From Selaginella moellendorffii (Eukaryota; Plantae; Lycopodiophyta): a stretch of 64,000 nucleotides of DNA. Both the position numbers and the translations under genes were made by a program. The DNA lies in assembly GCF_000143415.4 (NCBI RefSeq), contig NW_003314299.1:730229-794228 (forward strand), read 5' to 3'. Shown piece by piece: positions 15,492 to 62,070 of the stretch (the stretch's first letter is position 1; each line of letters begins with the position of its first letter). The notes beneath the pieces were generated by a model. The model searched no databases. It worked only from the letters and a program-made list of their open reading frames with translations, and had not been told where the DNA came from.

Positions 15492-16106
15492 GGCCGCTCC
15501 GCCCCCTTTAGGGCTTTAGCGATAAAATTTAAGCTTGTTATTAACCACATCTTAACTTATCATGCCATAAACTCTGATTAACTAACCTGATAATCATGTC
15601 TATTTTAACAACATGCTTAACTAACTTCGTAGCTCGCTAAAAGTTCCATTTACCTTGATAATGTCGGCCACATTAACCTTCCACTCTAGCCCGCCGTAAA
15701 AGTCAACGCAAAACACCCAGCCCTTGCCGGCATTGAATCTCCACCGCTGGATCAAACCTCGCCGGGCGGAGTTTTCAGAGATTTGGGACTCCATTGAAGC
15801 GTAGCGGCTGTTCCGACTGTAAGAAAGCAAAGAGTACATGGTAAAAATGGTATAAGAAGCTCAACTCTACCGGTGAAAAACATGACTCGCAAAGTCTTGT
15901 GGAGTTGACGATGCTTGTGACGATTCCCAGCAAAACGAGAGAAAAGAGTCCCCATTGATAAGACCTAACTGGTTCCATGCAAAGAGTGGCAAATCCCGTA
16001 AGGCAAAAATTGGCAGTGCCATTCTTAGGTGCATGGTTTTGCATGGAAAATTAACTCAAAGTTAAATCTTCATGATATACAAGATCAAACACTCTTTACC
16101 AATGTC

Positions 16107-19100
16107 ATGGACAGAATCCAATGCCTGTCTTTGATCCAATCCTGCAAAACGCTGCCTGCAGCCAGAGAAACTCACGCTCAAGTAAAGAACACTCGTTCCA
16201 TCCAAGAGAACGATGACTTTGTGTGGAACAAAGTGATAGACATGTATGCAAGGTGTGGAAATGCCAAGCTCGCGAGGGAAGTTTTCGATTCGCTGCCACA
16301 AGACAAAACCATGTTTTCGTGGGAAGCGATGCTCTCCGCCTACACCAAGAACGGGCATCTAGACGATGCCAGGCGCATATTCGATGCAATGCCACGGCAC
16401 ACTGTTCTGTCGTGGACTGTCATGCTAGCTGCTTATGCCCGTGAAGGGGATCTGGTGGAATCAAAAAGAATATTTGAGAGAATGGAAGAGCGGGACCTCG
16501 TTTGCTGGAACGCCATGCTTGATGCTTATGCCCAGAGGGGGTATCTTAATGAAGCTAAAAGTATCTTGGAGAGAATGGCTTACTGTGACGTGATTTCGTG
16601 GACAATTATGCTAAACGCATATTCCGAATCTGGGGACTTGACAGAGGTAAAAGATGTTTTCAAGAAAATGCCGCAAAAGAACTTGGTTTCGTGGAACTCT
16701 ATGCTCACGGCATATGCCCAAAGTGGGTATGTGTTTGAGATTGAGCAAGCTTTTGAGAACATTCCTATGAGGGACGTTGTCTCGTGGAACATTGTTCTTG
16801 GTTGCTATGTCAACATTGGAGATTTTCAAGCAGCCAAGGCTGTGTTTGATGACATGCCTGCTTGGAGTCTGGTGTCGCTCAATGCAGTGCTGTGTGTAAA
16901 TTTTCAGCAGGGAAACTGCGAGCAAGCGCTAAATACCTTCAGCGAAATGCCGGAAAGAGACTTGATTTCTTGGAACGCAATGCTCTCCGGATGTGCCTTG
17001 AACGGGCATATTGCAGACGCTTACAAGATATTCCAGAAGATGCCTCAGCGGGATATGGTGTCTTGGAACACAATACTGGGTGCCTATGCCCAGAAGGGGT
17101 ATGTCGTAGACGCAGAGAAAACCTTTGCTGCAATGCCTCAGACGGATCCAATTTCCTGGAATCTTTTGCTGGGTGGATATACTCAATCTGGAAATTTGGA
17201 GAGAGCAAAGTGTTTCTTTGAATCCAGTTCCCATAAAAGTGTTCTTTCCTGTAACACCATGTTGGCTGCATACACCGAAAATGGCCTTCTGGAGGAGGCC
17301 AAGCAGATCTTTGAAGCCATGCCTGTGGGAGATTCCGTCACCTGGAACACAATGTTGTGTGGATATGCTTCACAGGCTGGGAATCACGACGCAACAAGAG
17401 ATTTCCTTGAGGGAATGCCTGAAAAGGACTTGGTATCTTTCACAACGCTTTTGGGGTCCTTGAATCGAAGCCGGGAGTTTGATCAGGCGAAGGAATTGTT
17501 TGATAAAATGCCCGAGCATGACATTGCTTGTTGGAATTGTTTGCTGGTTTCTTATGCCCAGCAAGGGCATATGAAAGAAACGGCTCGATTCTTCAGCACA
17601 ATGCCATTTATTGACGACATTTCCTGGAATACTCTTCTCTCCGCTTATGCCCAAAACGGGGATCTTCAGGGATCTAAGGCTGTGTTTAAGAATCTCTCGT
17701 CACCTTCTCTTGCATCATGGAATGCAATGCTCTCGGCCTATGCCCAAAACGGGCATCTCTTCTCAGCTGTAGAGATCTTTGAAAAGGTTCCTCACAGGGA
17801 TCTTGTAACTTGGAACGCACTCTTGGGTGCCTATTCCAGAATGGGATCCATAGATTCTGTCAAAGTCCTCTTTGACGAGATGCCAGAAAGAGATCTCAGG
17901 TCATGGAATGCACTCTTAGGAGCTTATGCTCATTTCAACTTTCTCAATCTTGCAAAGGGTGTGTTTGATCAAATGCCCTCTCATGATATAGTTTCATGGA
18001 ACTCATTAATTTCTGGGTATGTCCAGACTGACAAGTTGGCAGAGGCAAGGAATTTGATTGATGCCATGCCTCAGTGGAATCTCGTGACGTGGAATGCCAT
18101 GCTGACTGGATATGCACAGTCAGGGCAAGTAAAGGAGGCCATGCGTTTGTTCGAGGGAATGCCAGAAGGGGACCTGGTGACGTGGAAGGCAATGCTGGTA
18201 GCATATATCCAAACGGGTGATATAAAGAGAGCACATTCCCTGATGGAGAATATGCCACAGCACAGTCTACTCTCCTGGACTGCCCTCGTTGCGGGATATG
18301 CCCGAGAAGGGCATATTCACAAAGCCCATGGCATCTTCCAGGGAATCCCACGGCTGGACGTGGTGTGCTGCAATGTCATGCTGGTGGCATATTCCCAGAG
18401 CGGGGATCTGGAGAACACCAAATGCCTGTTCGATGGCATGGAGCAACGAGATTCCGTGTCGTGGACCTCGATGCTGATGGGATATTCGTCGCTGGGCTAT
18501 GTGGAGGAGGCCAAGCGCGTGTTCGATTCCATGCCCCAACATCAGCCAGTGTCGTGGAACGCGATGCTCGCGGCCTTCTCCCAGAACGGGCAAATCCGCG
18601 ACGCGGAGATTATCTTCGCGGAGATGCCGCAGCGCGATCTCATCTCCTGGAATTCGATGCTGGCGTGCTACACGCAGCACGGACGCCTGGATCGCGCGAG
18701 GAAAACCATGCATCGAATGCCGGAGCGCGACACAATCTCCTGGACGTCGATGCTGGCGGCGTTTGCGATCGCGGGGCAGAGCTCCGCCGCCCTGGACGCG
18801 TTCAAGGCGATGAAGCTCGAGGACTGCATCGACGATACCTGCTTCGTGTCGGTGTTCGCGGCGTGCAGCCACAGCGGCGATCTGGCGGCGGCGCGGAGCT
18901 TCTTCGCGTCCATCGCCATGGATTTTGGGATCCAGCCTTCAAAGCAGCACTACTGCTGCATCCTAGATCTCCTGGGCCGCCTAGGGCATCTGGATGCCGC
19001 GGAGGATCTCATCGCATCCATGCCCTACGTCCCGGAGCTCCTGGATTGGACGTGCTTGCTCGGAGCTTGCAAGAACCACTCGGGCGCCAAGAGCGGGAAT

Positions 19101-19214
19101 AGGGCGGCCACTGGCGCCTTGCGGCTCAACGTACGGCACCCGCCAGTGTACGTCCTCGTTTCAAGTTTGATTGCCGCGCGGGAAACCATATCCACGTCAA
19201 TCGATGTTTGCTGA
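16107..19214 (+). CDS. PLS-class pentatricopeptide repeat protein (about 27 short 31-aa repeats + P2-L2-S2-E1-partial E2, no DYW); organellar RNA-editing factor-like
   Basis: Repeats of DLVSWNAML.AYAQ.G....A...F..MP.R, terminal FVSVFAACSHSG, HYCCILDLLGRLG, WTCLLGACK. True start may be a small upstream exon (ATG 15977, intron 15998-16028). Confidence 0.93.
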   Translation: MDRIQCLSLIQSCKTLPAARETHAQVKNTRSIQENDDFVWNKVIDMYARCGNAKLAREVFDSLPQDKTMFSWEAMLSAYTKNGHLDDARRIFDAMPRHTVLSWTVMLAAYAREGDLVESKRIFERMEERDLVCWNAMLDAYAQRGYLNEAKSILERMAYCDVISWTIMLNAYSESGDLTEVKDVFKKMPQKNLVSWNSMLTAYAQSGYVFEIEQAFENIPMRDVVSWNIVLGCYVNIGDFQAAKAVFDDMPAWSLVSLNAVLCVNFQQGNCEQALNTFSEMPERDLISWNAMLSGCALNGHIADAYKIFQKMPQRDMVSWNTILGAYAQKGYVVDAEKTFAAMPQTDPISWNLLLGGYTQSGNLERAKCFFESSSHKSVLSCNTMLAAYTENGLLEEAKQIFEAMPVGDSVTWNTMLCGYASQAGNHDATRDFLEGMPEKDLVSFTTLLGSLNRSREFDQAKELFDKMPEHDIACWNCLLVSYAQQGHMKETARFFSTMPFIDDISWNTLLSAYAQNGDLQGSKAVFKNLSSPSLASWNAMLSAYAQNGHLFSAVEIFEKVPHRDLVTWNALLGAYSRMGSIDSVKVLFDEMPERDLRSWNALLGAYAHFNFLNLAKGVFDQMPSHDIVSWNSLISGYVQTDKLAEARNLIDAMPQWNLVTWNAMLTGYAQSGQVKEAMRLFEGMPEGDLVTWKAMLVAYIQTGDIKRAHSLMENMPQHSLLSWTALVAGYAREGHIHKAHGIFQGIPRLDVVCCNVMLVAYSQSGDLENTKCLFDGMEQRDSVSWTSMLMGYSSLGYVEEAKRVFDSMPQHQPVSWNAMLAAFSQNGQIRDAEIIFAEMPQRDLISWNSMLACYTQHGRLDRARKTMHRMPERDTISWTSMLAAFAIAGQSSAALDAFKAMKLEDCIDDTCFVSVFAACSHSGDLAAARSFFASIAMDFGIQPSKQHYCCILDLLGRLGHLDAAEDLIASMPYVPELLDWTCLLGACKNHSGAKSGNRAATGALRLNVRHPPVYVLVSSLIAARETISTSIDVC

Positions 19215-21461: not shown

Positions 21462-22322
21462 ATGGAAAAATACAGTTTTGGGAGAGTGTTGGGGTGTGGT
21501 AGTGAAGGAAAAGTGATGCTGGGGTGTAACAATCAAAACCATAACAAGGTAGCAATTAAGTATTTAGGACAAGAGCACTCTATTTTGAATGCTATGGTGA
21601 ATGAGGTAGAAATCTTGGAAGAGTGTGCTGGGCATGTGAATATCATCAATCTTCTGGATGTTACAACAAACAAGAATGGCAGCTTCATGGTCTTTGAGTT
21701 GATGGAAACAGACCTAAGACATCATAAGAGGTTTGAAGGACATGAGATCAGATCGTTCATGAGGCAGATCCTTTCGGGGCTTGCATGGATCCACTCCAAC
21801 AAAATTGTCCACCAGGATATAAAGCCCGAAAATCTGCTAGTGAAAGGTGGTGTGGTAAAGCTTGCTGACTTTGGTCACGCACGAAGGTTGTGGGAACAAC
21901 CTAGGGAATGTTTTGGGACACTGTCATATCATTCTCCCGAGCAACTCAAGGGTGAGAGGGGCCTTTACTCTACAGCAATAGACATATGGGCAGCCGGGTG
22001 TGTCTTTGCAGAGATGGTTTTAGAGTTTCGGTTATTTGATCCCATAGACTATGAATTTATGAATGAAGAGGATCGGAAATGCCAAATGATGGAATTAATT
22101 CAAGCATGGAATTCATGGTCAGAATTGGAGCTTATAGTAGGCGATAAGAGCACTGTGGAGCTTATGGCAAGGATGCTAAAGGTGGATCCTTGCAAAAGGA
22201 TTTCTGCCCAAGGGGCATTAAAATCCAAGTATTTTGGTTCTGTGGAGGTGGGCACCCCAAGTATGCAAATGGTTGGTACTGGTGTTTGTAAGAATTTCAA
22301 TTTGGCATGTATTGCTCATTAA
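21462..22322 (+). CDS. Divergent intronless CMGC/CDK-like Ser/Thr kinase
   Basis: GCGSEG, VAIK, VFELMETDL, HQDIKPEN, DFG, GTLSYHSPE, DIWAAGCVFAEM, DPCKRISA. Confidence 0.85.
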   Translation: MEKYSFGRVLGCGSEGKVMLGCNNQNHNKVAIKYLGQEHSILNAMVNEVEILEECAGHVNIINLLDVTTNKNGSFMVFELMETDLRHHKRFEGHEIRSFMRQILSGLAWIHSNKIVHQDIKPENLLVKGGVVKLADFGHARRLWEQPRECFGTLSYHSPEQLKGERGLYSTAIDIWAAGCVFAEMVLEFRLFDPIDYEFMNEEDRKCQMMELIQAWNSWSELELIVGDKSTVELMARMLKVDPCKRISAQGALKSKYFGSVEVGTPSMQMVGTGVCKNFNLACIAH

Positions 22323-22492: not shown

Positions 22493-24545
22493 ATGAAGCG
22501 GGTGAATGCGGCGCGCGTCTTCTCCAGGCTCCTCGCCCAGAATGCCCCAGCAGCTGAATCCAGGGGGGCGCCATCCGATCTCTCCTCGTCTGGCGCCACG
22601 GCGCTGGCCGATCGCGGCCCCTTTGCCTCGCGTCTCAAGAGCCGCGCCGTGCTGGGATTCGATGGCGACGACACATTCAAGTTCCTGCAAGGCCTGGCAA
22701 CCAACGACGTTCTCCAGCTCGAGGCCGACGAGCACTCCGCCAAGCTGGGAACGCCCACTCCCAATCAGCCGGGCGTCGTCCAGCCCCCAATCTACACTGG
22801 GATTCTCAACCCCCAGGGGAGGTTCTTGTTTGATATGTTCCTCTACAAGCCTGTGCAGGAATCCGAGAAGCTGGGCAAGGGTGGCGATGCTCCAGGGGCT
22901 GGCAAGAGTGTTCCACAGCTCGTTGCCGATGTGGATGCTGCCAGTTTTGACGATCTCATCGCTTATCTCAAAAGGTATCCAAAATTCGATTTCTTCTTGC
23001 TCAAGTTCTTCCTCATGGTTTTCTAGTGCCTTTTTTTATTTGGTTTGCTTTCATCATTAGTATGTTTCTCGCATCAACTTCTTTACCAGTTGTCTTTCCA
23101 TTCTCCTGTTTTTTTCTTTTTTCTTTGGCTGGGGTGTTTTTGCAAGTTTATTTCATCGCAAAAAAATTCTTTTATGTCATAATGGGAATTTGCTCCGATA
23201 CCTTTTTTTCGTCTTTCCATTCTGCTGTTGCTTCGCTTCTTTATTTTTTGTTTCCTTCTCTGCCTGGGTGCGACTTTGCAAGATTTTATGCTAGTTATTC
23301 CTTGTTTGTATAAAAACAATGAATTTTTATATGTCATACTCGAATGGTTTTCATTTGCTTACGTTCCATCAGGTTTCTTGTTTGTTTTTCCAGATGCATC
23401 TCTTAAATTCTTGTCCAACGTCCGTAAAACTTTTTCGGTTTTTAATCTTCCTCCAGGTACATTTTACGCTCCAAAGTCAATATCGAGGACCTTTCGAAGG
23501 ATCTCTGCGCCTGGCAACGCTTTGGCGGTGCTCTGGCAGGTTCTTCCACTTCCGAGACTGGCGCTGGCAACATCGGCTGGGCTGGAGGCCGGGACTTGAG
23601 TGGGACAACCGCTGCGGAAGGAAATGGAAAAGGCTGGCGATGGTTTAAAGATCCCAGGCTCGACGCGCTTGGATTCCGTGGCGTCTTCTCCTCTGGCATA
23701 ACACGTAAGAATCTGTCCAAGGTTTGTCAGTCACGAGAAGAGACTCACCAAGAAGAAACTTTTGATCAACTCTTGTTTTAGAACAGCGCCTTTGGTCGAA
23801 GCTGATCAAGAAGTTGACGAGGAGTATTACCTTCTCTGGCGACTTGAGCAGGGAGTTCCCGAAGGCCCGGCTGAAATTCCTGGAGGTGAGTTAATCACTT
23901 TTCCACTTACGGTTTCGTGCAAACTTAGAAGCTGTAAACTTCTTTCTTTCTTTTCCCAGGAGAAGCCATTCCACTCGAGTACAACATGGCCGCTCTCAAC
24001 GCCATCAGCTTTGAGAAAGGCTGCTACGTCGGACAGGAACTAATAGCAAGGACGCATTACCGAGGAGAAATTCGCAAGAGGCTCATGCCTGTAAACTTCG
24101 TTCTGGAAAACGGAGAAGGTACTTTTTCTTGCTCTCCATTCTTTTAGTTTCTCTTTAGGATCTCGTACTCGACGCGAGCGTGCTTCCTTCCACAACTCTC
24201 CAAACACGGCAGCTTGTAGAAAGCTTTCTTCTTTAGAGTCTCCAGCTAGTCGTGAGCTTTCATCCTCGGTAGCAGCTCACGAAACTTCAGCTCTCATGGT
24301 TTGCTTGTTTAATCGCAGAAATGCGCGAGGGAGTGGCTCGTGGCACAGAGATTATGGATGGAGAAACCGGGAAGAAAGTGGGGTCAGTGGTCACAGCTCT
24401 TGGCTCGCGAGGATTGGCGATGGTGAGACTGGAGGCGGCAGCTAAAGACAGACTGAAGCTCCAGAGCGTGGACGGTGGCGGCGGCGCTTTCGTGAAGCCC
24501 ATTCGGCCCAAATGGTGGCCCAGTCAATGGGGCACTGTTGACTAA
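22493..24545 (+). CDS. IBA57: Mitochondrial folate-dependent Fe-S assembly factor IBA57/CAF17 (YgfZ, COG0354)
   Basis: [65 protein letters not shown]. Introns ~22974-23456, 23705-23781, 23886-23959, 24119-24318. Confidence 0.92.
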
Positions 24546-24653
24546 CCGGGCCACTGGTGATATGGCCAAGAGTTTAGCCAACAACAAAATGATGGGCATA
24601 TCCCTGGGAATATCGCCTCTACATTTTAGGGTTTATAACAATGAATTTCAAGG

Positions 24654-25008
24654 AGCGAGAAAGAAAACTGGATCATCAACGCGAAGAAGATGAGGGAGGA
24701 ATCGGCGACAAGGACGTGGAGATGGGGAGGGGCCAGCGCCGCGAGCCTGGAGCAAGCAATGCCAGCGACGACGGCGGCAGTGTCCATGGATGGCGGATCA
24801 TCTGAGAGACCCAAGAACACACATTGATGGCGTCCATGGGCATTGGGCATTCGAATCGGCTGCTCGTGAGCAATTCGCCCAGCGCGTCCGACCACAAGCG
24901 ATCGAGCTTTAGCAGCGCCGCCAGCTGCAGCAAGCCTCCAAAAACTCCAAGCTCGACCACCCAAGGCATATCCACCGCAAGAACTACGTGCTCTTCCGAA
25001 CGCGATCC
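24654..25008 (+). pseudogene. Truncated, deleted copy of the SLAC1/SLAH 5' end
   Basis: Colinear with 33403-33808, with multiple deletions. Ends at ...cgcgatcc. Confidence 0.85.
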
Positions 25009-26199
25009 CATACTAATAATCGAACCCGCAAGCAGTGTCCTTGATTCGGACTTAATCTTAAGGTTATGGAGAAGTCCCTAGAGAATACAGAAGCCGCAGG
25101 CGATATGAGCAGCAACACCGACATCCAGGAAGCTGTAGAATACATGGAAATGCTACGTGCTTATTGTGACACACATTCTCGAACCAAAAAGTCAGTGTTC
25201 TCTTCTTTTTCCAGGTTTCCAATTTTTTAATAGCTGCCAACGAGCTTCTTGCCTTATGCCTATGCTTGTTGGAGCTTTGCTATCTGTGTTGGCTTTACAA
25301 ATAGCGATATGAGCAATAATTTCATGTTCTAATGTTTTCTTTTTTCTCACAGGAAACTACGTGTCTTTTCTTGCAAATCTCGTGGTGTTCCTGTATAAAT
25401 GGTAGCCATTTGGCAACGAATACAAAACCAAAGCCGTTTGGAGCTATTGCCTCGACTGCAAATGGTAACAATTGGAGTACACACCTGTCAGCACTAACAT
25501 TTTCTCAGTCCTTTGCATACAGGTTGAACTCCTTTTTAATATCACTTACTCTCACAAATTTCCTTCTCGACATGCCTTTACTCTGGAAAAAGAAGAAGTC
25601 ACTCGGTTGTGGAACTGTGTAGAACCTTTCATCGGATTCATAACTAGAGGTATCCATGACCTGCCGAATTCTTTCTCTTTGATAAAAGTGAGGGAAACGG
25701 CATCAACCAACCTTTCATGAGGTCATTTTGAGCTCCTCTCAAAAGAATGTGAAGCTGAAAAGCAACAAGTAATCTTATGTTCATGCCTACTGTCACCATA
25801 TGACATTCCCCAGTACTTGAGAGACTGACTTATTAGGCATGAACTCCTATATCAAACAACCACTGTGACTCATTCTGAATATAATAAACATTTGTTTCTT
25901 GAAATGTGACCCAGCACAGCTAGATTATTTGGGAGGCCTGGAACAGAATTGGCGACAATCCTGGCGCTTGCTTGGCAGACACTCCAATTATGATCCAATC
26001 TGATACTCTCCTTCTCTTCCAAAATTAAAAGTAAGATTTACATGAGCCAAGGAGGGAATCCAGCCAAGTCATGGTAATGAATTCACTGCTCCAGCCATGG
26101 GCCTTGATTGATCGCCAACGCACGAACTTTGTTTAATCCCACAAAAATTTGTTTAATTGCGTTTGCTGGGAAAAAGTATAACATTCTCATGTATGTCCG

Positions 26200-27263
26200 A
26201 GATCCATCCCTTCACGCTCCAGAAAGAGAAGCTCTTCTTTCTCGCAGGCAAGTTGGTCTTTAAATGTGGAAAGCTATATATATGTGTGTAAAAGATTCTG
26301 AGAATCCACATTATTCGAAAAGTGTGCAAAGTCTGCGCAACTTTAGCCTACTGTTGAAGATCCTATCCTACCTATCGGCAACGACGGACTCGATGCGTCT
26401 TCTCTGGCCTGGGATTGATGGGCATACAGAAGAGGAACAGCCAATAGAGGGCGACGGAGATTCGTTGATGTTCATTGGACGCGAAGCTGCTAAAGACCTA
26501 TACCGGCGGATCTTACAGTTGAAGAGGGGCAGGGTCATTGTGATGGGTTCCCAAGGCTCGGACAGTCTTGGTTCATGCAGTTTGCAACCACATCCAGCAG
26601 TCGGGCTTGAGGAGGAGCGTGTTCCTTGATGTATCAAGTTTTCACTGCTTACCTTGTGGAGGAGCTTGCTTCTTGCATTCTGTGAACAAACCGTTGAAAC
26701 GAAGGAGATCCGTAAAGTGCAAGACCTTGATATGCTTATCGCTTGGTGCATTCTGAAGAAAGGTCTCGTGTTTGTGGTCGATGACAGAGACAAAAAGCGA
26801 AGATTCGGAGCAACTAAAGAATGCTAAGGAGACCGCCAGAAGCTGCGTTGAAGAGCTTGTCGAGCACCAAATCCTGGTCCAGATTCCGTCGGTTGACAGC
26901 AGAGAACGCCTCGCCATGGAGGCTAATCCCAAGAAGAAGCTACGGCTCGAGTGCGACAAGTTCATGGTGAACGGGCCTTTCAATGCAGCCAAGCTTTCAA
27001 CATGGAAGGGCTTGTCGTCGTTGCCTGACTCTGTGAAGCAAAGTACAAGCTTAACCTTTCTAACTGGGGGGATGCCGAGACTCTTGAAATTCTTTGAACG
27101 TGCTGGCGGCGACGTGGCGAAGTATACAAAACTAATTAGTTCTGTTACGCACAGGCTGTGGTCCGATTTCATCGGCAACTTGGAGACTGAGGAGGAAGTG
27201 CCTGCAGGTGTACTCCTTGTTGCACGATTCGTCATGGAACCCGTGCTTCTAGGGAAGATCTAG
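26200..27263 (+). pseudogene. Frameshifted P-loop NTPase of Crinkler/RHS-type (CR) or STAND-like architecture
   Basis: MFIGREA, Walker A VIVMGSQGSG[K]TVLVHA broken by a ~5 nt deletion at ~26561, Walker B LVFVVDD (26765-26785), TGGMPRLL (~27063). Possible upstream exons from ~25105 and downstream exons to ~28800. Confidence 0.6.
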
Positions 27264-27276
27264 AGCACGATCTAGA

Positions 27277-28111
27277 GCAATGCAATTCACCACCATTTTC
27301 ACCTGAATATAAATTTTTTTTAAGAGTCTCGTTCATATAATACTGTCTCATCTGGGAGGCTGAAAGGTGGTTCATGTGTTAAAAAGTATTTCGACATAGC
27401 TTGTCAGCGCTCCTGCACAGAAAATGAAGCAGATATAATTTACCCCAGGTGCTCGCCTTCAGCTGCAACCGTGTTTCCGCAAGGAGTCTTCCCGTCTGCG
27501 TTTCTGGCCACACAGCAAGGCAAATGCCTGTGGCAGTAAAATCCTCTTTTGGAGGCATGGGAGCAGCAAGCACTAAACAGTCCATCATCATATGTAAAAG
27601 AGGAAGTAAGGAAGAATAAAAGACTTAGACAAAGAGTTCTCTAGATTCCATCTAGACAATTGGTACTTGCCGACTTCTTCATCGAAGTAAGATGGAACAC
27701 AATTTAGAGCAGGAACTCTTTGTCAAAGCATCTTTTATTTTTCTTCACTTCCTCTCACCCTAACACTGACGTGGTAGCAGATGGAATATTCCCTCGGTTC
27801 TACAGATAAGTACTCCAGAAGAGGATTTTACTGCCGCAGGCATTTGCCTTGCTGTGCGGCCAGAAACGCAGACAGGAAAACTCTTTGCGGAAACACGGTT
27901 GCAGCTGAAGGAGAGTGCTGCAAGCAGCACCTGGGGTAAATTATATCTGCTTCATTTTCTGTGCAGGAGCGCTGACAAGCTATATCAAAATGCTTTTTAA
28001 AAAGAGCAGACACATGAACCAACTTTCAGCCTCCGAGATAAGACGGTATTATATGAACGAGACTCTTAAAAAAAATTATATTCAGGTGAAAATGGTGGTG
28101 AATTGCATTGC
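27277..28111. repeat. Long imperfect inverted repeat (foldback)
   Basis: 27277-27554 is the reverse complement of 27813-28111. Inner arms 27599-27653 and 27690-27756 also pair. Central loop ~36 nt. Confidence 0.95.
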
Positions 28112-28819
28112 GTGGAGCACTGCCGAGCCCAACTGCGGCACGGCAAGCGCACGGAATCCTTGTTGCTCTCGTAGATATTGATATGAGCAGAAGCTCCCAG
28201 TGAGCTCCTCAAATTGATGAATGCAGGGGCTCTAAGCTAACATATGCAAGCACTTCATGCACATCCTAGAATAAGCTCGCACATGTGACATAGAACACTA
28301 TAAACACGAAGATCATAGTGTGTGCTCATTTTAGACGGCAAGCTTGTCCATCTCGAGCTTATCAGAGATCAATAGCAAAGGTGACAAGGGGAAAGTTGGC
28401 GCTCTAACTGTACAGCCTACGGCATGTAGGAGCTCGTCCGCGGGTGAGGAGTGCTGGACATGGGCTGCTATATCCAGGAAGCTGAGCTCTGGTAATGTTC
28501 CTGGGAGCCAACATAAAATGCTTGTTTAGTGGCGTCGATCCGCTGAAGCTTGAAACTCGCCCTGGCTGGCTGGCTGGCCTTGCTCCATCTGATTGACAAG
28601 GACGAGCTCGAGTCAAACCGAGGTTTCTACGCACTCATTTGAATCAAGTGGTTCCACTCATTCTATTTTTTCGTTTCGCTATGGATGCTTGATTGATGGC
28701 AAGAACAAAGAAAAAATCTCCTTGAGGACAGGTAGATTGTTGTTGAAACTCTTCATGAAACGCTTGGATGACATTTCGTGGTGCTTTCAGCTGCTGTTGG
28801 GCGGACCACTTTTGTTTTA

Positions 28820-31690
28820 AAATTTTAAATAATTTACTGTGCTTACAGCATGATCAGAAAAAAAAAAATCACAGTCCATAAAATTCATTAAAATAAATTT
28901 TAACATACTTCTGAAAATTGAAGCAAGCTGTAATAAAAGGGCACAAATTCTAGGTCATACAGATTAAATCTATATATTAGTATAATACATATCTCACCAA
29001 AACTTTCAACTGAATCTAATCCATCCAATATATTTATATTTTAGTAGAGCTAAAAATACACCAAAACCCTATAAAACTAAGTGGTAGATCTCATAGAAGA
29101 TAAGAAATGGGTTAGATCCTATTTCCTTTACATGAAACATTTTAGTTATCTTTTAGAAGATTAGTCTAGTGAAAAAAATCAATGGGAAAACTGGAAAGAA
29201 GTTGAAATACAATTAAAAAATATAGTTTTTTTTAGAGAACTAAGCTTTAGTTATTTATATCCAGAGTTTGTTTCTAGTGTAATGTATAAATTCTAAAGCA
29301 TAGGTAGAATACATAAATTCGATATTAAGGCCTTCTTTATTATCTAAACATGGAAAATGTGTACAAACATTATTATCTTGGCAAATGATAGCAAAGTTAA
29401 AGTTCTTTCTAGACAAAGTAAATACATGTATAATCATGATCTGCTTAAGAAGTCCCATCTAGTCAAGCTTGTATTAAATAAATTATACATGAAGTGTTAA
29501 ATTCTATAAAAGCTTTGAGTTTTATTACATTTTAAGCTTTATCCACTCAAATTTGGTAGCAACATTTCAAATTTTAATAATTAGCAAGAAGAATAAATGG
29601 AAGTGATGACCAAGAATTTTCTCTAAGAAAACAAAAAGCACTTATAGGCCACTATTCCTTCATACATCAAGTAGATAATTTGGATGCATAAAGAAGTTTA
29701 TATAGTTTACAAACTCATGAAGTTAAATTTATATTTTTTTATATTGGATAGCTCAAATTCCTTCTAACAAATAAAACTTTTAAAAAAAAATAGTATAAAT
29801 TGAGTTCTCTTTGCCTTTTATTTTTTTTTCTAACCTTTTTTTATTTTCTAACTTTTGCCACCTCCTCATGTTTCTAGTATTTTTTCTTCATCTCTATACT
29901 TTTTTCTTCTGATATATTGATCAATTTAGACTTTTGTGATTTTCATTCTTTGTCAAGTGTTGACTTGAGTGTTATTTGCCTTTTTCAAATTTATCCATAT
30001 GTTTAAATTGTGTTCATGGTCAAGAATCTTGTTTTTGTCTTGTTGGTGAAGTTTTTGATTAGTTTTGTTAAATATTCCCTTATTTAAGGGGTTTTACTTT
30101 TTCTAGAATTTTATCTTGGCAATTGTTAAAAATATTTATTTTACCATTTTTGCTAAGAAATTCTTTATTTATGTAAAGTTTTCTTTAATTTTTTTTTTGT
30201 CTCAAATGCTAAGTTTAATATTGAATAATGTCAATATTTTACTTATCTTATATTGTTCAAAGTATTTTATAGCAAAACATCCGCTATTACCCAACATTGT
30301 TTTTGACAAAATTTGTTATATTATAAGGTTTATTATTATCTAAGCCTTTCTCACATTTTATTCTTTGATGTTTTTCATTTTTATATTGATAATTGCTAAA
30401 AGTTCTTCTTCCTATACTTATCCATTTTTTTGTTTTCTATAATATTCTTTACTCAATATTTTTACTTTGGCTCAATACTTTAATTCTTTTTGTCTAATAA
30501 GATGGGGTAGAGGGGATGAATGAAAGTTCAACCCTAATGATGGAATAAAAATGATTGATAAATGATATTAAAATGAAGTTGAATAACATATATTATGAAG
30601 TGAAGATAAGTGTAATAAGTCCAAATGAAACACTTAATCAAGAAAGAATATATTTGAGATAATATAATAATGGAATGAGGCCAAATATAAGTAACAAAAT
30701 AAGAATGAGTATAATAAGTTTAAATGGAGTTAGTGCTTTAAATTTTTTCTCCTTTGAGGGTGAGGATATGGAAAATGAATGAAGTGAATTTAGCCTTTAA
30801 TTTGTAATGTTAGACAAAAATGATGGTTGTTTGTCTAAGTTAACTTAAACTTCAAAGGGTGATTTATAAAAAAATGCAAATATAAATTGTGTAGCACTTA
30901 TATTATCATTGTGGATTTTTAGAACCTTAGGGAATAAATGGAGATATAATAACCATTAAAATGTTTTTTATTAAGTAATTAAATTTTTTTCAATTGGCTT
31001 AAAGAGAGAGATAAAATATATTACATGTGGCATTAAAGAAAATGTCATAAGTTCAATTTTCAATAATTAATAGCTATTTTAAATATTTTTCTATCTCATG
31101 AGATAAGGTGCACTACAGGTTCAAATTGTTATAAATTTGAGTTCAAGATGGTCTCAAAAGTAAATTCAAATGATGGTTGTAAATTAATTGAAGGGCAATG
31201 TAAAAAGGAAATTTATCATTTGCTATGTAGTGGATTGCAATTGCCCTCAAATTTATTTTTTTTGGTTTGACATTGTAACTTTTAGATTTACAATTTCTCA
31301 ATTCTTTAAGATTTCATAATTGACTAATATTTGTGCTATAGTTATAATCTATTTTTATTATAGTTGTTAGCAATTATATTGTATAAATTGCTAATCTAGT
31401 GGTGTTTCAACTTCTTGAAGCTTACTTATTTTCTAGTGAGGAAGGTAAACTTTCTCATTTTCTAGAAATTTTCTAAAGGGGAAGATAGTAAATATATATA
31501 TTACTTTACCTTAAATAATGAATATAGCTATTCTAAGTGAAATTTAAACAACCTTTAATTCACTTAAACACAATCTTTTGACCATGCTTTTTACAAAAAT
31601 AAAATTATGAAAATAATGCTCTGGGAGAATAACCTACTTTCTTGGAGAACTGATATACTCAACTTCTACACCATTGTTGTGGAGCTACTT
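28820..31690. other. Very AT-rich tract, probably an ancient eroded transposon
   Basis: Abrupt composition shift, no long ORF, CG dinucleotides almost absent. Element type not identifiable. Confidence 0.45.
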
Positions 31691-31879
31691 GTTTGTTTGC
31701 AACAGTCACCAAGGATTCACACTGCAGCTTCTCGAGATTGATTGATGCTCAAAGATTTCCATGAACACGAGAGCAAGGATTTTACATGATAAAAAAGTAA
31801 GTTGCTCATAGGTATGGGTTAGCAACACGACGGGTGTCGGGGTGTCATCACATTTTAAAGGTTCTTCACTCTCTCTCTC

Positions 31880-33169
31880 TAGCGCGCGCCTCTCCTCGCC
31901 CAGCATGCCCCAGCAGCTGAATCCAGGGGGGCGCCATGCCGGGTGCTCACCGATCGCGGGCCCTTTGCCTCGCGTCTCAACAGCCGCGCCGTGCTGGGAT
32001 TCGACGGCGACGACACATTCAAGTGTGGGATTCTCTGCGACTTTGCACGATTTTATGCTAGTTTTTCCTTGTTCAACGGTATTTTTATATCTCACGCTCG
32101 AATGGTTTTCAGTTGCTTGCGTTCCATCAGCTTCCTTGTTTGTTTTTCCAAATGCATTTCTCTTAAGTTTGTCCAGCATACTTAAAACTTTCTCAGATTT
32201 TAATCTTTCTTCAGGCGCTCCAAAGCCAACATTGAAGACCTTTCGAAGGATCTCAACGCTTTGGCGGTGCTTTGGCAGATCCTTTCACTTCTGAGACTGG
32301 CGCTGGCAACATCGGCTGGGCTGGAGGCCGGGATTTGAGTGGGACAACCGCTGCCGAAGAATATGGAAAAGGCTGGGGATGGTTTAAAGATCTCAGGCTC
32401 GTCGCGCTTGGATTCCGTTCTGGCATAACATGTTAGAATCTGTCCAAGGTTTGTCAGTCACGAGAAGAGACTTACCAAGAAGAAATTGTTGATCAACTCT
32501 TGTTTTAGAACAGCCCCTTTGATCGAAGCTGGTCAAGAAGTTGACGAGGAGTGTTACCTTCTCTGGCGACTGGATTCCTGGAGGTGAGTTAAACACTTTT
32601 CCTGTTACGGTTTCGTACAAACTTAGATGTTGTAAACTTCTTCCCAGGAGAAGCCATTCCACTCGAGTACAACATGGCCGCTCTCAACCCCATCAGCTTT
32701 GAGAAAGGCTGCAACGTCGGACAGGAACTAATACCAAGGACGCATTTCCGCTCATGCCTGTAAGTCTCGTTCTGGAAAACGCGGAAGGTACTTTTCCTTG
32801 CTCTCCACTCTTTTTTATTCTCTTTAGGATCTCGTACTCACGTGAGCGTGCTTCCTTCCACTCGCATCACAACTCTCCAAACACGGCACTTTAGAAAACT
32901 CTCTTCTTTAGAGTCTCCAGCTAGTCGTGAGCTTTCATCCTCGACAGCAACTCGAAGCTCTCATGGTTTGCTTGTTTAATCGCAGAAATGCGCGAGGGAG
33001 TGGCTCGTGGCACAGAGATTATGGATGGAGAAACCGGGAAGAAGTGGGGTCAGTGATCACAGCTCTTGGCTCGCGAGGATTGGCGATGGTGAGACTGGAG
33101 GCGGTAGCTAAAGACAGACTGAAGCTCCAGAGCGTGGACGGTGGTGGCGGCGCTTTCGGGCACTGTTGA
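31880..33169 (+). pseudogene. IBA57/CAF17 pseudogene (duplicate of 22493-24545)
   Basis: Colinear including introns. ATG lost, exon 1 largely deleted, KGCYVGQE changed to KGCNVGQE, several frameshifting deletions. Confidence 0.92.
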
Positions 33170-33448
33170 CTAGAAAGTGAGTGATCATACGGTCGGGAGA
33201 CGTGTCAAATTCCTAGGAATATCCCCCATAGTTTAGGGTTTATAACATGGAGAGCTTAAATTTGGTTGTGTGGCTCAAGCGCGGCCACTGTAAGTGCCAC
33301 TGCGCCCGTGACAGATCAAAGCAGCACGGATCTCCACTGGAACAATCGCTACTTAAGCCGCGCCTAATTCGATCGATCGATCCATATCACGCAAGCGCTC
33401 GGGAGAGAGAACACTGGATCATCACCACTCACGCGAAGAAAGGAAGCA

Positions 33449-35300
33449 ATGGGGGAGGACGAGGACGTGGAGATGGGGAAGAGGAGCAGCGCCGCGAGCT
33501 CCACCGATCTGGAGCAGGCAATGCCGGCGACGACGGCAGTGTCGATGGATGGGGGAATATCGGAGAGACCCAAGAACAGCCCGGCCTGGATGGCGGCCAT
33601 GGGCGCCGGGCATTTGAATCGGCTGCTCGTGAGCAATCCATCGTCGCCCAAGTCGCGCTTCGCCCCAAAGGATCCCGCGGACCAGAAGCGATCGAGCTTT
33701 AACAGCAGCGCCAGCGGCAGCAAGCCATCGTCTCCAAAGACTCCGAGCTCCACCCAAGACATCCACCGCAAGGACTCCGAAAAGTACGTGCTATTTCGGA
33801 CGCGATCCTCCAAGATCGAGAAGCAGCTATCACGCCTCCGCGAGGAGGAGATCCAGCAGCAGCAGCAGCAACACCACCAGCTCGATCCAGGCGATCATCC
33901 AGAGCAGCAGCAGCAATCCAGCAAACCGATCCACCACGAAGATCACTCCGCCCAAGTTCCCGCCGGGCGATACTTCGATGCTCTCCAAGGCCCGGAGCTC
34001 GAGCAGCTCAAGGAATCCGAGGAGGCGCTCCTCCCTCTCGACCAGCGATGGCCATTCCTCCTGCGCTTCCCAATCTCATCGTTTGGAGTGGCGCTGGGGC
34101 TTGGCAGCCAATCCATTCTCTGGAAGAACCTCTCCACGGTCCCAGCGATGCGATTCCTCCACGCCCCGGAGATCATCAACACGGTGCTGTGGTTCCTGGC
34201 CGCGATCGCGCTCGCCGGGATCTTCACCACCTATCTCTTCAAGGCGATCTTCTACCTCGAGGCGGTGAGGCGCGAGTACTACCATCCTGTGCGCGCAAAC
34301 TTCTTCTTCGCGCCATGGATCGCCGCGATGTTCTTGGCACTGGGCATCCCTCCATCGGCGGGAGTGACGCTACATCCCTGGATCTGGTGCTGCCTCATGG
34401 CGCCAATCCTCGCGCTAGAGCTCAAGATCTACGGGCAGTGGCTCTCGGGCGGCCAGCGCAGGCTGTCCAAGGTCGCGAATCCGTGCACGCACCTCTCCGT
34501 GGTGGGCAATTTCGTGGGCGCGCTGCTGGGAGCGACCGTGGGATGGATCGATGGCGGGATCTTCTTCTGGGCGATCGGGCTCGCGCACTATCTGGTGCTC
34601 TTCGTCACGCTCTACCAGCGACTGCCCACCAACGAGGCGCTGCCCAAGGAGCTCCACCCGGTATTCTTCCTCTTTATCGCCGCGCCCAGCGCTGCCAGCC
34701 TCGCGTGGGAGAAGATCACCGGAGACTTTGGCATTGTCTCTCGGATCGCCTTCTTCATCGCCCTCTTCCTCTTCTCATCACTGGTAAGAACCCTAAAATT
34801 TGCTGCGTGGTCTCTTTCCAACGGTACTAACGATGGATTGGAATCTCTCTTTCTTCCAGATCGTGAGGATCAATTTCTTCCGGGGCTTTCGATTCTCGCT
34901 CGCCTGGTGGGCGTACACGTTTCCCATGACCGCCATCTCCATCGCCAGCATTCACTACTGCCAGGAGGTTTCCACGCCCGTCACGCAAGCGCTGGCGACG
35001 ATCCTCTCCTCCGTCTCTAGCGCCACTGTGGCGCTGCTCTTCGTGGCGACGATGTGCCACTGGCTGGTGTGGAAGACCCTCTTCCCCAATGATCTCGCCA
35101 TCGCCATCACCAACCGGAGGAGGAAGAGGAAGAGGCATTCCCATGGCTCCGAGGAGGATTTCTCCACGAGTAGCGGCAATGGCAGCAGCAAATCCAGGGA
35201 CGCCACGAGCACCAGCACGGATTGGAGCTGCGCGATTCTTCCCAGCGTCGAAATGAGCACCTCGTCGTGCTTTGGGACGAAGACGAAGGTGATCGATTAG
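33449..35300 (+). CDS. S-type anion channel, SLAC1/SLAH family (one intron 34784-34859)
   Basis: WPFLLRFPISSFG, EAVRREYYHPVRANFFFAPW, LELKIYGQWLSGG.RRLSKVANP, LPKELHPVFFLFIAAPS, FSLAWWAYTFPMT, LFPNDLAIAIT. Confidence 0.95.
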
Positions 35301-59199: not shown

Positions 59200-60380
59200 G
59201 TGAGACACAAATCCCAGAGCCCCAAAAGTAGAGCTGAAAGGGAGCTACGTGGTAGTGGCCGAAGCGGAAGCCAAACGAGCATAACACGTTTGGACTAAAA
59301 GCTCTGACTTGAAAAGTTGAGAGTGGGAGTGGAACTCTCAACAAAGTGCTAAAGAAACAAGCAATAAATAAGTCTCTAGAAAAGGGACACAAGAGGACCA
59401 ACACATGATATGTGGAAGTGTCGAGATTGACCCAAGATGAACCCAAGATGGAGTCTAAGATGGACTTGAGATGGAGTTTGAGATGGAGTTTGAGACAGAC
59501 CAAGATAGAGCCTAAGATGGACCCAAGATGGAGTCCGAGATGGACCTGAGATGGAGTCCAAGATGGAGTCTGAGATGGAATCAAGATCAAAACCATGTCC
59601 GAGTCTAAGTTTGAGTTTGAATTTGAATATTAATACAAGCTATTGGGTGAAAGTCCAAAATGATTGTCCCCCCGGGGGGGGGGGGGGGGGTTGTAGGGGA
59701 TTCCAAAATTATAGTAGAGAGAGTGTAGGGGTTGGACCTTAGTGGAGTTAATTTGGCTAGAAAAGGCCAGTGTGACCCAAGAAAGCTATACCCACGTGTT
59801 GGGTGATGATATATTCACTAAGGATTCCATGACTAAAGTGACAATGCTCCCAATCTACATATTTGGATACTTGGCATGGCTCAACAGAACCTCACTATGA
59901 AACACAAAATCCCTAGGCCCCAAAGTGGAGCCGAAAGGGTGCCATGTGGTGGTGGCCAAAGCAAAAACCAAACGAGCGTAACACGTTTGGACTAAAAGCC
60001 CCGACTTAAAAGGTCGAGAGCAGGAGTGGAACTCCCAACAAAGTGCTCGAGGAACAAGCACGAAGCGAGCAATAAGCGAGGCTCCAAAAAGAGACCCAAA
60101 AGGACCAACACATGACACGTGGAAGTGTCCGAGATGGACTCGAGTTGGAGTCCGAAGTGGAGTCCGAGATGGACCCGAGTTGGAGTCCGAGATAGAGTCC
60201 GAGATGGACCCGAGATGGAGTCCGAGATGGAGTCCGAGATGGAGTCCGAGGTGGACCCGAGATGGACCCGAGATGGTGTCCGAGATGGAGTCCGAGGTGG
60301 ACCCGAGATGGACCCGAGATGGAGTCCGAGATGGAGTCCGAGATGGAGTCCGAGATGGAGTCCGAGATGGAGTCTGAAGT

Positions 60381-60412
<32 letters not shown>

Positions 60413-62070
60413 GGACCGAGACTGAGACCGAGGCCGAGGCCGAGACCGAGCCCGAGCCGGAGCCCGAGCCGGAGTCCGAGTCCGAGTCCGAGTTCGAGTC
60501 CGAGTCCGAGTCCGAGTCCGAGTCTGAGTCCGAGTCCGAGTTCGAGTCCGAGTCCGAGTCCGAGTCCGAGTCCGAGTCCGAGTCTGAGAGGGTGAAAGCC
60601 CAAAGCGTTCGTCTCCCAGACCCTGGGGGGTTTGGTGAGCTCCAAAAGTATAGTAAGGGGGAGGACTGCAGTGGAGCCAGTTTGGCCAGGAAAGGCCAGT
60701 TTGGCCCAGGAAGGCCAGACCTAGTGTTGGGTGATGAGCTGCCCACTGGGAAGTCCAAGACTAGAGTGAACACGGACCAACAAGCGGGGTAGCTTGGTGA
60801 AGTGTTCAAGAGCCGGCTCTAGTTCCCCCGGGAGATCGACTGGCCGATGCTCCCAGTCCAAGTGTGGGTGGCACTACCTACTTGGATACCTAGCGTGGCT
60901 CAACGGAACCTCGCTCTAAGCCCATGGCTAGAGCACCTAAAGGCGAAAGGCGGGGAGAGTACCCATGAGGCTTGCGTAAGGCCACGGTGTTCCGAAATGT
61001 TGTCCCAAAATCCCTAACGGTGAAAGAGAAGAGGAGTAGGCCTTTAATGCAGTGACCAAGGATACGGTCACATGGTGAGGAAGTCCCAAAGGATAGTGGG
61101 ACTTAGTGGTCGGGCCTGCGGGCCTTGATCCAGTGGCAGTGTTGATGAACACGGCCATGGACAGAAAGGGACTTGGTGGGGACCAGAAAGGAGATATTGG
61201 GGAAGGCTATTTCCCATGTCTGTGGGCATCCTAAGGATGCTAAGGAGTGGATTGGGGATGACCACTCATGGACGGATAGCCCAGTCTTGGAGAGATGGGA
61301 TTGCAATGCAGGTGGTGTTGGACCACCGATGTGACCAAGGTGATTGGGCATGGCCTAGCGTAATGGGCTAGTATGTTGGTGGTGCCTTGGGGTGTCGGTC
61401 ATGGGATCAGACACGTGGAGCACTTGGACCAAGTGCAAAGGTGGAGTGGCACGGAGGCCATTCTCGGGGCTAGCAAGCCCCAAGTCCTAACTTGGACTTA
61501 TGGAGGTTGTGAATGAGACTCCTCCAAGTGGTCGGAGGTGCGGTTAAGTGACTAAAGTAAAATGGAAAATTTAGTCGCCTACACTCACTCTAACCCCATG
61601 ACCAAAGCACCCAAAGGCAGAAGGTGGGGAGAGTACTCATGAGGCTCACATAAGGCCACGGTGTTTTGAAATATTGTCCTAAAATCCTGCACTGTTGAAA
61701 AGAAGAGGAGTAGTCTATAAGGAACCAACTCTTTGAGGTGTCGAAGGCTAAAGGAAAACCGAAAACATGACCAAAATGATAAAAAGTTTATTAAATGAGA
61801 CAAGTCTGAGATCGAGTCCAAGACCGACTCTAAGACTGAGTTTGAGACTAAGTCCGAGATTGAGTCTGAGACCGACTCCGAGACCGAGTTGGAAACCGAG
61901 TCTAAGATCCGATATCGGGTCCGAGACTGAGTCCGAGATCAAGTCTGAGATAGAGTCCGAGATCAGGTCTGAGATCGAGTCTAAGACCGAGTCCGAAGTT
62001 GGTTGTGGGTGAAAGCCCAAAGCGTGTGTCTTCCAGGGGGGGCTATAGGGGGTTCCAAAAGTATAGTAAC
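59200..62070. repeat. Composite repeat units containing GAGNNN hexamer/12-mer arrays
   Basis: 59200-59897 approximates 59899-60915; 60921-61045 approximates 61594-61720; arrays at 59425-59620, 60128-60588 and 61797-61996. Confidence 0.85.

What the first reader, a model, noticed from the sequence alone, without database searches (positions are those of the whole stretch)
27277..28111. 835-nt foldback built from the NTPase locus's own exons: candidate hairpin-RNA silencer of the family
Seen: ~280 bp outer arms plus ~55-65 bp inner arms and only a ~36 nt loop. The right arm carries plus-strand exon/intron-like signals (gtaaat...tgcag, gtatta...ttcag), so the left arm looks like an inverted gene copy. 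The junction has a small GATCTAGAGCA duplication (27257, 27269) exactly where the NTPase frame stops. Most arm mismatches are transitions. Known: inverted gene duplications give rise to plant hp-siRNA and young miRNA loci. Inference: read-through from the pseudogene yields small RNAs that silence intact paralogues in trans.
Basis: partly seen in the sequence, partly recalled or inferred. Interest (0 to 1): 0.78.

Follow-up and report, generated by a model that had tools for sequence, protein, structure and literature searches.

The report
Hairpin scar in dead spikemoss gene
A dead gene in the spikemoss Selaginella moellendorffii carries its own tail end twice, face to face, as an 835-base hairpin-forming repeat; it is most likely a DNA-repair scar, and no gene similar enough for it to silence was found.

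Summary
The foldback at 27277-28111 is real. Its outer arms are 278 and 299 nt, 95% alike, with 11 transitions and 3 transversions. A 41-43 nt inner pair is 90% alike. Predicted RNA hairpin energy is about -563 kcal/mol, z about -45 on either strand.

The genome is Selaginella moellendorffii. They hold the last ~40 codons, the stop codon and ~170 nt of 3' UTR of a Selaginella P-loop NTPase-nuclease family gene. The right arm lies in gene orientation and the left arm is inverted. The tail of the closest relative (P0002) scores best in the whole six-frame window on exactly these two arms, above all 100 shuffles.

The gene is dead: Walker A lysine lost, an in-frame stop, frameshifts, and the ~250-residue nuclease middle missing.

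The silencer idea is not supported. The nearest family member found is 47% identical in protein, and shared residue runs are at most 5. The arms decay neutrally (5 of 7 tail changes alter the residue). Neither strand keeps pairing better, and CpG sites decay about ten times faster, as in methylated silent DNA.

An ordinary endogenous inverted repeat; low interest.

The parts
26264..27263 (+). Remains of a P-loop NTPase-nuclease family gene (pseudogene). Pieces 26264-26626, 26630-26824 and 26757-27260 lie in two frames; the frame ends at TAG 27261-27263.
   Evidence: Family HMM hits cover positions 26-98, 134-185 and 186-323 of 634. tblastn to P0002 gives E=1e-27 at 45%. The Walker A region reads GSQGSDSL where relatives have GAKGSGKS/T, there is an in-frame stop at 26627-26629, and a frameshift near 26800.
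27257..27280 (+). Left junction: a 12-nt tandem duplication (GATCTAGAGCAC / GATCTAGAGCAa). Its last 3-4 bases overlap the first bases of the inverted repeat.
   Evidence: Read directly from the sequence. It resembles templated filler at an end-joining junction (inference).
27277..27554 (-). Left outer arm: inverted copy of the 3' UTR (27277-27439), the stop codon (27440-27442 on the - strand) and the tail coding sequence.
   Evidence: the repeat finder, alignment, BLASTP of 27443-27640(-) to P0002 466-496 with E=4e-8.
27443..27640 (-). Left copy of the family C-terminal Cys/His tail. It keeps the upstream CC..SK..YC.RH part and lacks 12 nt (4 codons) near the end.
   Evidence: Smith-Waterman score 76; shuffle maxima 42 +/- 4, highest 54.
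27555..27598 (.). Patch of the left half that aligns poorly with its mirror at 27756-27812. The left version keeps homology to P0002; the right version does not.
27599..27639 (.). Left inner arm, pyrimidine-rich on the gene-sense strand and possibly intron-derived.
   Evidence: It pairs with 27713-27755, 37 of 41 matching with one 2-nt indel (pair I5).
27640..27712 (.). Central loop, with small local hairpins.
27713..27755 (.). Right inner arm.
27778..27939 (+). Right copy of the family tail in gene orientation. It ends ..CCKQHLG followed by stop TAA 27937-27939, the same position as the end of P0002 (..CQKHSA stop).
   Evidence: BLASTP E=5e-4. Second-best score in the whole six-frame window (61, above all 100 shuffles). 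Top hit of the tail HMM.
27813..28111 (+). Right outer arm: the end of the tail coding sequence plus about 172 nt of AT-rich 3' UTR-like sequence (27940-28111).
28113..28120 (+). Octamer TGGAGCAC, a 7-of-8 direct match to TAGAGCAC at 27261-27268. It may be a target-site-like duplication or a chance match.
   Evidence: GC rises from 0.28 to 0.63 at this boundary.

Best explanation
The foldback is a local DNA rearrangement scar in a dead gene. A Selaginella P-loop NTPase-nuclease family gene lost its nuclease-coding middle. Its 3' end (about 100 nt of upstream, probably intronic, sequence, the last ~40 codons, the stop codon and ~170 nt of 3' UTR) is now present twice, head to head. The right copy lies in gene orientation and the left copy is inverted and abuts the truncated NTPase exon. 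The left junction carries a 12-nt templated duplication and 3 nt of microhomology, as end joining or template switching leaves (inferred). Since then both copies have decayed neutrally, with a large excess of CpG transitions, which points to methylated, silent DNA (inferred). If the locus is transcribed from either side, the RNA would fold into a ~280 + ~40 bp imperfect duplex, a substrate for Dicer-like enzymes, which would make it an endogenous inverted-repeat (endoIR/hpRNA-type) locus. The only sequence known to match such small RNAs is the locus itself, so any effect would be in cis, reinforcing its own silencing, and not on paralogues.
For: The repeat and its fold are shown. Species and family: P0001 is the public model of this locus in S. 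moellendorffii, and the relatives P0002-P0010 are all from Selaginella. Gene origin of the arms: BLASTP to the P0002 tail gives E=4e-8 (left) and 5e-4 (right). Window-wide tblastn gives E=0.004. Smith-Waterman scores of 76 and 61 are the two best among 2402 six-frame segments, against shuffle maxima of 42 +/- 4 with a highest value of 54. P0002 is also the closest relative of the NTPase exon (47%), and the stop codon falls at the homologous place. Pseudogene status and the missing family-HMM positions 324-577 are shown. Neutral decay: 5 nonsynonymous against 2 synonymous changes in the true frame. No strand bias: 5 G:U wobbles on the + strand against 6 on the - strand among 14 differences. CpG decay: 7 of about 24 CpG positions differ, against 7 of about 253 others. 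Lycophytes lack angiosperm-type gene-body methylation (PMC5410703), so CpG decay here suggests silencing-type methylation. No close paralogue was found. No Rfam family matched.
Against: There are no expression, small-RNA or methylation data for this locus. Only annotated or predicted proteins could be searched, so an unannotated close copy, or a parent copy, elsewhere in the genome cannot be excluded. The palindrome is flanked by a 7-of-8 direct octamer, and GC content jumps at its right end. These features fit capture or insertion of a ready-made palindrome better than an in-situ fold-back. The poorly matching ~45-nt patch between the inner and outer arms is not explained by one clean fold-back event.
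Confidence: 0.6

Rival explanations
1. One reading: read-through transcription from the pseudogene makes a hairpin RNA whose siRNAs silence intact NTPase paralogues in trans (an hp-siRNA or proto-miRNA locus).
For: The arms are gene-derived and the hairpin is long and stable on both strands. Plant endogenous inverted repeats are diced without an RNA-dependent RNA polymerase, and inverted gene duplications are a proposed origin of MIR genes (PMC10827316; PMC3237417). DCL1, DCL3 and DCL4 orthologues are reported in lycophytes (PMC5569507).
Against: The closest family member is 47% identical over the NTPase exon and about 42% over the tail. The longest identical residue run to any frame of the foldback is 5, too short for a 21-nt match. 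Word searches found no closer fragments. There is no excess of pairing-preserving changes on either strand. More than half of each outer arm is 3' UTR, which diverges fastest between paralogues. No transcript evidence exists; the only public model is a chimeric protein prediction.
Confidence: 0.07
2. A mobile foldback or MITE-like element, or a palindromic fragment captured at a staggered break, inserted into the exon and made an 8-bp target duplication.
For: The direct octamers TAGAGCAC (27261) and TGGAGCAC (28113) flank the palindrome. TRGAGCA is enriched here, with 4 on the + strand in 860 nt against about 0.18 expected. Both flanks are GC-rich and exon-like while the arm ends are AT-rich. 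Another foldback inside a decayed NTPase gene was noted elsewhere in this genome (s1-418913; not checked here).
Against: The inverted repeat does not reach the octamers: 8 nt intervene on the left and 1 nt on the right. The termini do not look like known TIR ends. There is no second copy in the 64-kb window. The arms carry the tail and stop codon of the same subfamily as the host pseudogene, which a foreign element would not be expected to do. The right flank shows no family homology above chance, so it is not shown to continue the interrupted exon.
Confidence: 0.15
3. A cis-acting silencing trigger: the hairpin is transcribed at a low level and its siRNAs direct DNA methylation of this NTPase cassette and its surroundings, as a form of genome defence against a possibly selfish gene family.
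For: CpG sites decay about ten times faster in the arms, which fits long-standing methylation. The cassette sits between old duplications of its neighbours' junction, an architecture noted elsewhere for this family (s1-421616). Endogenous inverted repeats can direct local methylation (PMC10827316).
Against: Methylation was not measured. S. moellendorffii shows no obvious 24-nt small-RNA peak (PMC5569507). A dead gene needs no silencing, so no selective benefit is evident. CpG decay would also follow from methylation that has nothing to do with the hairpin.
Confidence: 0.15

Closest known systems
Plant endogenous inverted-repeat (endoIR / hpRNA) loci such as Arabidopsis IR71, and the inverted-duplication model of MIR gene birth (Allen et al. 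2004, as cited in PMC10827316; PMC3237417)
   Same: A long imperfect inverted duplication of genic sequence that would fold into an extended RNA duplex without needing an RNA-dependent RNA polymerase.
   Different: No small RNAs or transcript are shown here. No target gene with matching sequence was found. The founder gene is itself dead, and the arms are mostly 3' UTR plus about 40 codons.
Pseudogene-derived small-RNA loci (the rice survey in PMC2708354; from my own knowledge, mouse oocyte inverted-repeat pseudogene endo-siRNAs)
   Same: A pseudogene with an internal inverted repeat that could yield siRNAs related to a gene family.
   Different: In those cases the small RNAs were sequenced and a closely similar parent gene exists. 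Here the nearest relative is 47% identical in protein.
Fold-back inversions / deletion-plus-inverted-duplication rearrangements from break repair or replication template switching (own knowledge: fold-back priming, FoSTeS/MMBIR, polymerase-theta end joining with templated insertions)
   Same: An inverted duplication next to a deletion, an asymmetric centre, and a junction with a short templated duplication and 3 nt of microhomology.
   Different: The palindrome is also flanked by a 7-of-8 direct octamer, which these models do not require. The mechanism is inferred from one locus only.
MITEs and foldback transposons
   Same: Compact, non-coding, almost wholly inverted repeat, with short direct repeats nearby.
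   Different: The arms are gene-derived, the inverted repeat does not abut the direct repeats, and no other copy was seen in the sequence available.

Membership tests
Endogenous inverted-repeat / hpRNA siRNA locus | A long near-perfect inverted repeat with a short spacer that folds into an extended duplex | tested here: met
Endogenous inverted-repeat / hpRNA siRNA locus | Both arms transcribed on one RNA | not testable with these tools
   No RNA-seq access. The only public model (P0001) is a chimeric protein prediction.
Endogenous inverted-repeat / hpRNA siRNA locus | Small RNAs of 21-24 nt from both arms of one strand | not testable with these tools
   No small-RNA libraries were available.
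Trans-acting hairpin silencer / proto-MIR from inverted duplication of its target | An intact target gene with extended near-perfect complementarity to the arms | tested here: not met
   Tested through protein as a proxy only. The best relative is 47% identical, nothing closer was found, and identical residue runs are at most 5. Unannotated copies and UTRs could not be searched.
MITE / foldback transposon | Terminal inverted repeats reaching the element ends, directly flanked by a target-site duplication | tested here: inconclusive
   A 7-of-8 octamer direct repeat is present, but it is separated from the inverted repeat by 8 nt on the left and 1 nt on the right.
MITE / foldback transposon | Multiple dispersed copies in the genome | not testable with these tools
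   There is no second copy in the 64-kb window.
Selaginella P-loop NTPase-nuclease family (STAND/NACHT-like NTPase + nuclease-like domain + Cys/His tail) | Homology to the NTPase core, including the Walker A and Walker B regions | tested here: met
   Pfam gives only sub-threshold NACHT/nSTAND hits for the relatives.
Selaginella P-loop NTPase-nuclease family (STAND/NACHT-like NTPase + nuclease-like domain + Cys/His tail) | An intact reading frame that includes the middle (nuclease-like) domain | tested here: not met
   An in-frame stop, frameshifts, loss of the Walker A lysine, and HMM positions 324-577 absent from the window. It is a pseudogene.
Selaginella P-loop NTPase-nuclease family (STAND/NACHT-like NTPase + nuclease-like domain + Cys/His tail) | A C-terminal Cys/His tail ending just before the stop codon | tested here: met
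   The tail is present twice, once in each arm.

The most novel reading that the evidence does not exclude
Foldbacks made from the genes' own ends could be a recurrent fate of this possibly selfish NTPase-nuclease family in Selaginella; a second foldback inside a decayed family member was noted elsewhere in the genome. They could act as heritable hairpin triggers that keep the cassettes, or still-unannotated close copies, silenced. On this reading the TRGAGCA motif at all three joints would mark a site-specific breakage step.
Probability: 0.07. Interest if true: 0.65.

Novelty: new member of a known kind. Interest (0 to 1): 0.25.

Why it matters
As it stands this is an ordinary by-product of genome rearrangement: a gene-fragment palindrome in a pseudogene. 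Its practical value is as a correction. The public protein SELMODRAFT_418478 is a prediction artefact stitched from an NTPase exon and out-of-frame pieces of both hairpin arms. It is also a dated, well-delimited example of a deletion plus inverted duplication in a compact lycophyte genome. It would matter more if small-RNA data showed that such hairpins are a regular means of silencing the expanding NTPase-nuclease cassettes of Selaginella.

Tried and rejected
1. The homologous frame is a different one, which ends at TAA 27937.
2. Rfam at permissive thresholds over 26000-29500 gave only chance-level miRNA hits (E 0.1-0.55, far below the gathering scores).
3. The bacterial-type promoter and terminator scan is not informative for a plant.
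4. The right flank resembles family tails in two places (NCGTASARNPCC on the + strand, RLPCRSWAR on the - strand). Both are within shuffle noise and were dropped.
5. No remnants of the nuclease domain were found anywhere in the window.
6. Word-index protein searches were blank or nearly so: P0002 gave 1 distant hit, the 66-aa tail frame none, and the 168-aa exon none. The length limits on these searches mean full-length relatives were seen only through the exhaustive search.
Therefore no paralogue DNA, second haplotype or empty site could be fetched.
8. The search of earlier findings by sequence was blank.
9. The collections of metagenome, prokaryote-genome and viral contigs were not scanned, because they do not hold plant genomes.
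10. The pieces of the broken gene were searched apart, by reference.

Full report
**Observation**

The sequence at 27277-28111 is a genuine foldback.
- The repeat finder reports four collinear outer blocks (93-98% complementary) and an inner pair.
- A gapped alignment of the left half against the reverse complement of the right half shows outer arms of 278 nt (27277-27554) and 299 nt (27813-28111). They have 263 matches, 11 transitions, 3 transversions and three indels of 1, 10 and 12 nt.
- Next comes a ~45-nt patch that hardly aligns (27555-27598 against 27756-27812).
- Inner arms 27599-27639 and 27713-27755 match at 37 of 41 positions, and the centre is 73 nt.
- As RNA, either strand folds to about -563 kcal/mol, against about -220 for shuffles (z -48 and -43).
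- The arms have no other copy in the 64-kb window.
- Five per cent divergence plus indels rules out an assembly palindrome.

**Where we are**

An exhaustive HMMER search with the 168-residue open frame 26757-27260 found nine proteins.
- The best, P0001 (99% identity over its first 89 residues), is GenBank EFJ20120.1, SELMODRAFT_418478 of Selaginella moellendorffii.
- All the close relatives (P0002, P0003, P0005-P0010) are Selaginella hypothetical proteins of 500-700 residues.
- They share a Walker A motif (GAKGSGKS/T), a Walker B motif (LLFVVDDWD), a middle nuclease-like region and a short Cys/His tail.
- Pfam gives them only sub-threshold NACHT/nSTAND/AAA hits.
- Earlier notes of this scan call the wider family Crinkler-like NTPase-nucleases. 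I did not test that label.

**The upstream gene is dead**

Against relatives and a family HMM, the window holds family positions 26-98 (26264-26626), 134-185 (26630-26824) and 186-323 (26757-27260), and nothing for positions 324-577.
- Walker A reads GSQGSDSL, so the lysine is lost.
- There is an in-frame stop at 26627-26629.
- The frame shifts at least once near 26800.
- Homology ends at 27260, where relatives continue into a conserved ..TCFY.. segment.
- I searched these pieces apart, by reference.

**What the arms are**

P0002 is the closest relative of the NTPase exon (47%).
- Its last 40 residues align to the minus-strand frame of the left arm (27443-27640; BLASTP E=4e-8).
- They also align to a plus-strand frame of the right arm (27778-27936; E=5e-4).
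- I scanned the last 45 residues of P0002 by Smith-Waterman against all 2402 six-frame segments of the window. The two arms scored best (76 and 61) and the next segment scored 42. One hundred composition-preserving shuffles had maxima of 42 +/- 4, with a highest value of 54.
- The right copy ends ..CCKQHLG and then TAA (27937-27939). P0002 ends ..CQKHSA and then its stop.

So each arm consists of the end of the coding sequence, the stop codon and ~170 nt of AT-rich 3' UTR. The right arm is in gene orientation and the left arm is inverted.

They are what led the public gene model to read on: P0001 is a chimera of the NTPase exon and out-of-frame pieces of both arms.

Each copy has decayed differently. 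The left copy lacks four codons near the end but keeps the upstream CC..SK..YC.RH part. The right copy keeps the end but has lost similarity upstream.

**How it arose (inferred)**

The simplest history is one complex rearrangement of the gene itself, in which the nuclease-coding middle was lost and the 3' end was copied in inverted order.
- The left joint has a 12-nt tandem duplication and 3 nt (GCA) shared with the arm end. Junctions of this kind are left by end joining with templated filler, or by template switching.
- Two facts fit less well. First, the palindrome is bracketed by direct octamers TAGAGCAC (27261) and TGGAGCAC (28113), and the heptamer TRGAGCA also sits at the edge of the loop (27705). 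That is four copies on the + strand in 860 nt where about 0.18 are expected. Second, GC content jumps from 0.28 to 0.63 exactly at the right end of the repeat.
- These two facts would suit capture of a ready-made palindrome at a staggered break. However, the repeat does not abut the octamers, and the right flank shows no family homology above chance.
- I could not tell the two histories apart.

**Does it work as a silencer?**

Nothing supports action on paralogues.
- The nearest family member in 1.84 billion cluster representatives is 47% identical over the exon and about 42% over the tail.
- Three word-index searches found nothing closer.
- No known member shares more than five consecutive residues with any frame of the foldback. 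No 21-nt match is therefore possible in coding sequence, and 3' UTRs diverge faster still.
- In the true frame, five of the seven differences between the two tail copies change the residue.
- Of the 14 arm differences, 5 stay paired as G:U on the + strand and 6 on the - strand. Neither strand shows selection for pairing.
- Seven of about 24 CpG positions differ between the arms, against 7 of about 253 other positions. Lycophytes lack angiosperm-type gene-body methylation (PMC5410703), so this suggests silencing-type methylation.
- Background from the literature: plant endogenous inverted repeats are diced without an RNA-dependent RNA polymerase (PMC10827316). Lycophytes have DCL1, DCL3 and DCL4 but no DCL2, and S. 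moellendorffii shows no clear 24-nt peak (PMC5569507). The hairpin could therefore be processed if it is transcribed, but the only known match for its products is the locus itself.

**Limits**

There are no transcript, small-RNA or methylation data. Only proteins, not the genome, could be searched, so unannotated close copies and genome-wide copy number remain open.

**Context**

The pseudogene, the foldback and an AT-rich stretch lie between two old direct copies (72-84% identical) of a CAF17/IBA57-like gene, at 22529-25008 and 31892-33808. This is the architecture that note s1-421616 described for other NTPase cassettes. Note s1-418913 reports another foldback inside a decayed family member, and note s1-341428 reports a similar silent hairpin scar in an O-methyltransferase gene. 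I did not check those loci.

**Verdict**

The trans-silencing function is not supported. This is a new example of a known kind, an endogenous inverted repeat from an inverted gene-fragment duplication in a pseudogene, and it is of low interest unless small-RNA data say otherwise.

Noticed in passing
window 22529-25008 and 31892-33808: An old direct segmental duplication (72-84% identical) of a CAF17/IBA57-like gene brackets the NTPase pseudogene, the foldback and an AT-rich stretch (28500-31800, GC 0.29-0.34). The layout is the same as the 'cassette between duplicated neighbour junctions' architecture noted elsewhere in this genome.
   Followed up: partly
window 26781-28529 (public model P0001 = EFJ20120.1, SELMODRAFT_418478): The public 323-residue 'hypothetical protein' is a prediction artefact. 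Its first 88 residues are the NTPase exon. The rest is out-of-frame pieces of both hairpin arms plus an unrelated downstream open frame.
   Followed up: yes
window 27261-27267, 27273-27279, 27705-27711, 28113-28119: The heptamer TRGAGCA, in direct orientation, sits at the left junction (twice), at the edge of the central loop, and 2 nt past the right end of the repeat. About 0.18 copies are expected in this span. Its role is unexplained.
   Followed up: partly
window ~16029-19211: A long intronless pentatricopeptide-repeat gene with a clear 93-nt (31-codon) periodicity.
   Followed up: no
window 59400-62000: Arrays with a 12-nt period (units like GAGTCCGAGATG, shading into GAGACC/GAGTCC hexamers) in several blocks, G-rich on the + strand. 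Not examined.
   Followed up: no
window 21462-22322: An intact 286-residue CDK-like protein kinase open frame just upstream of the CAF17-like gene.
   Followed up: no
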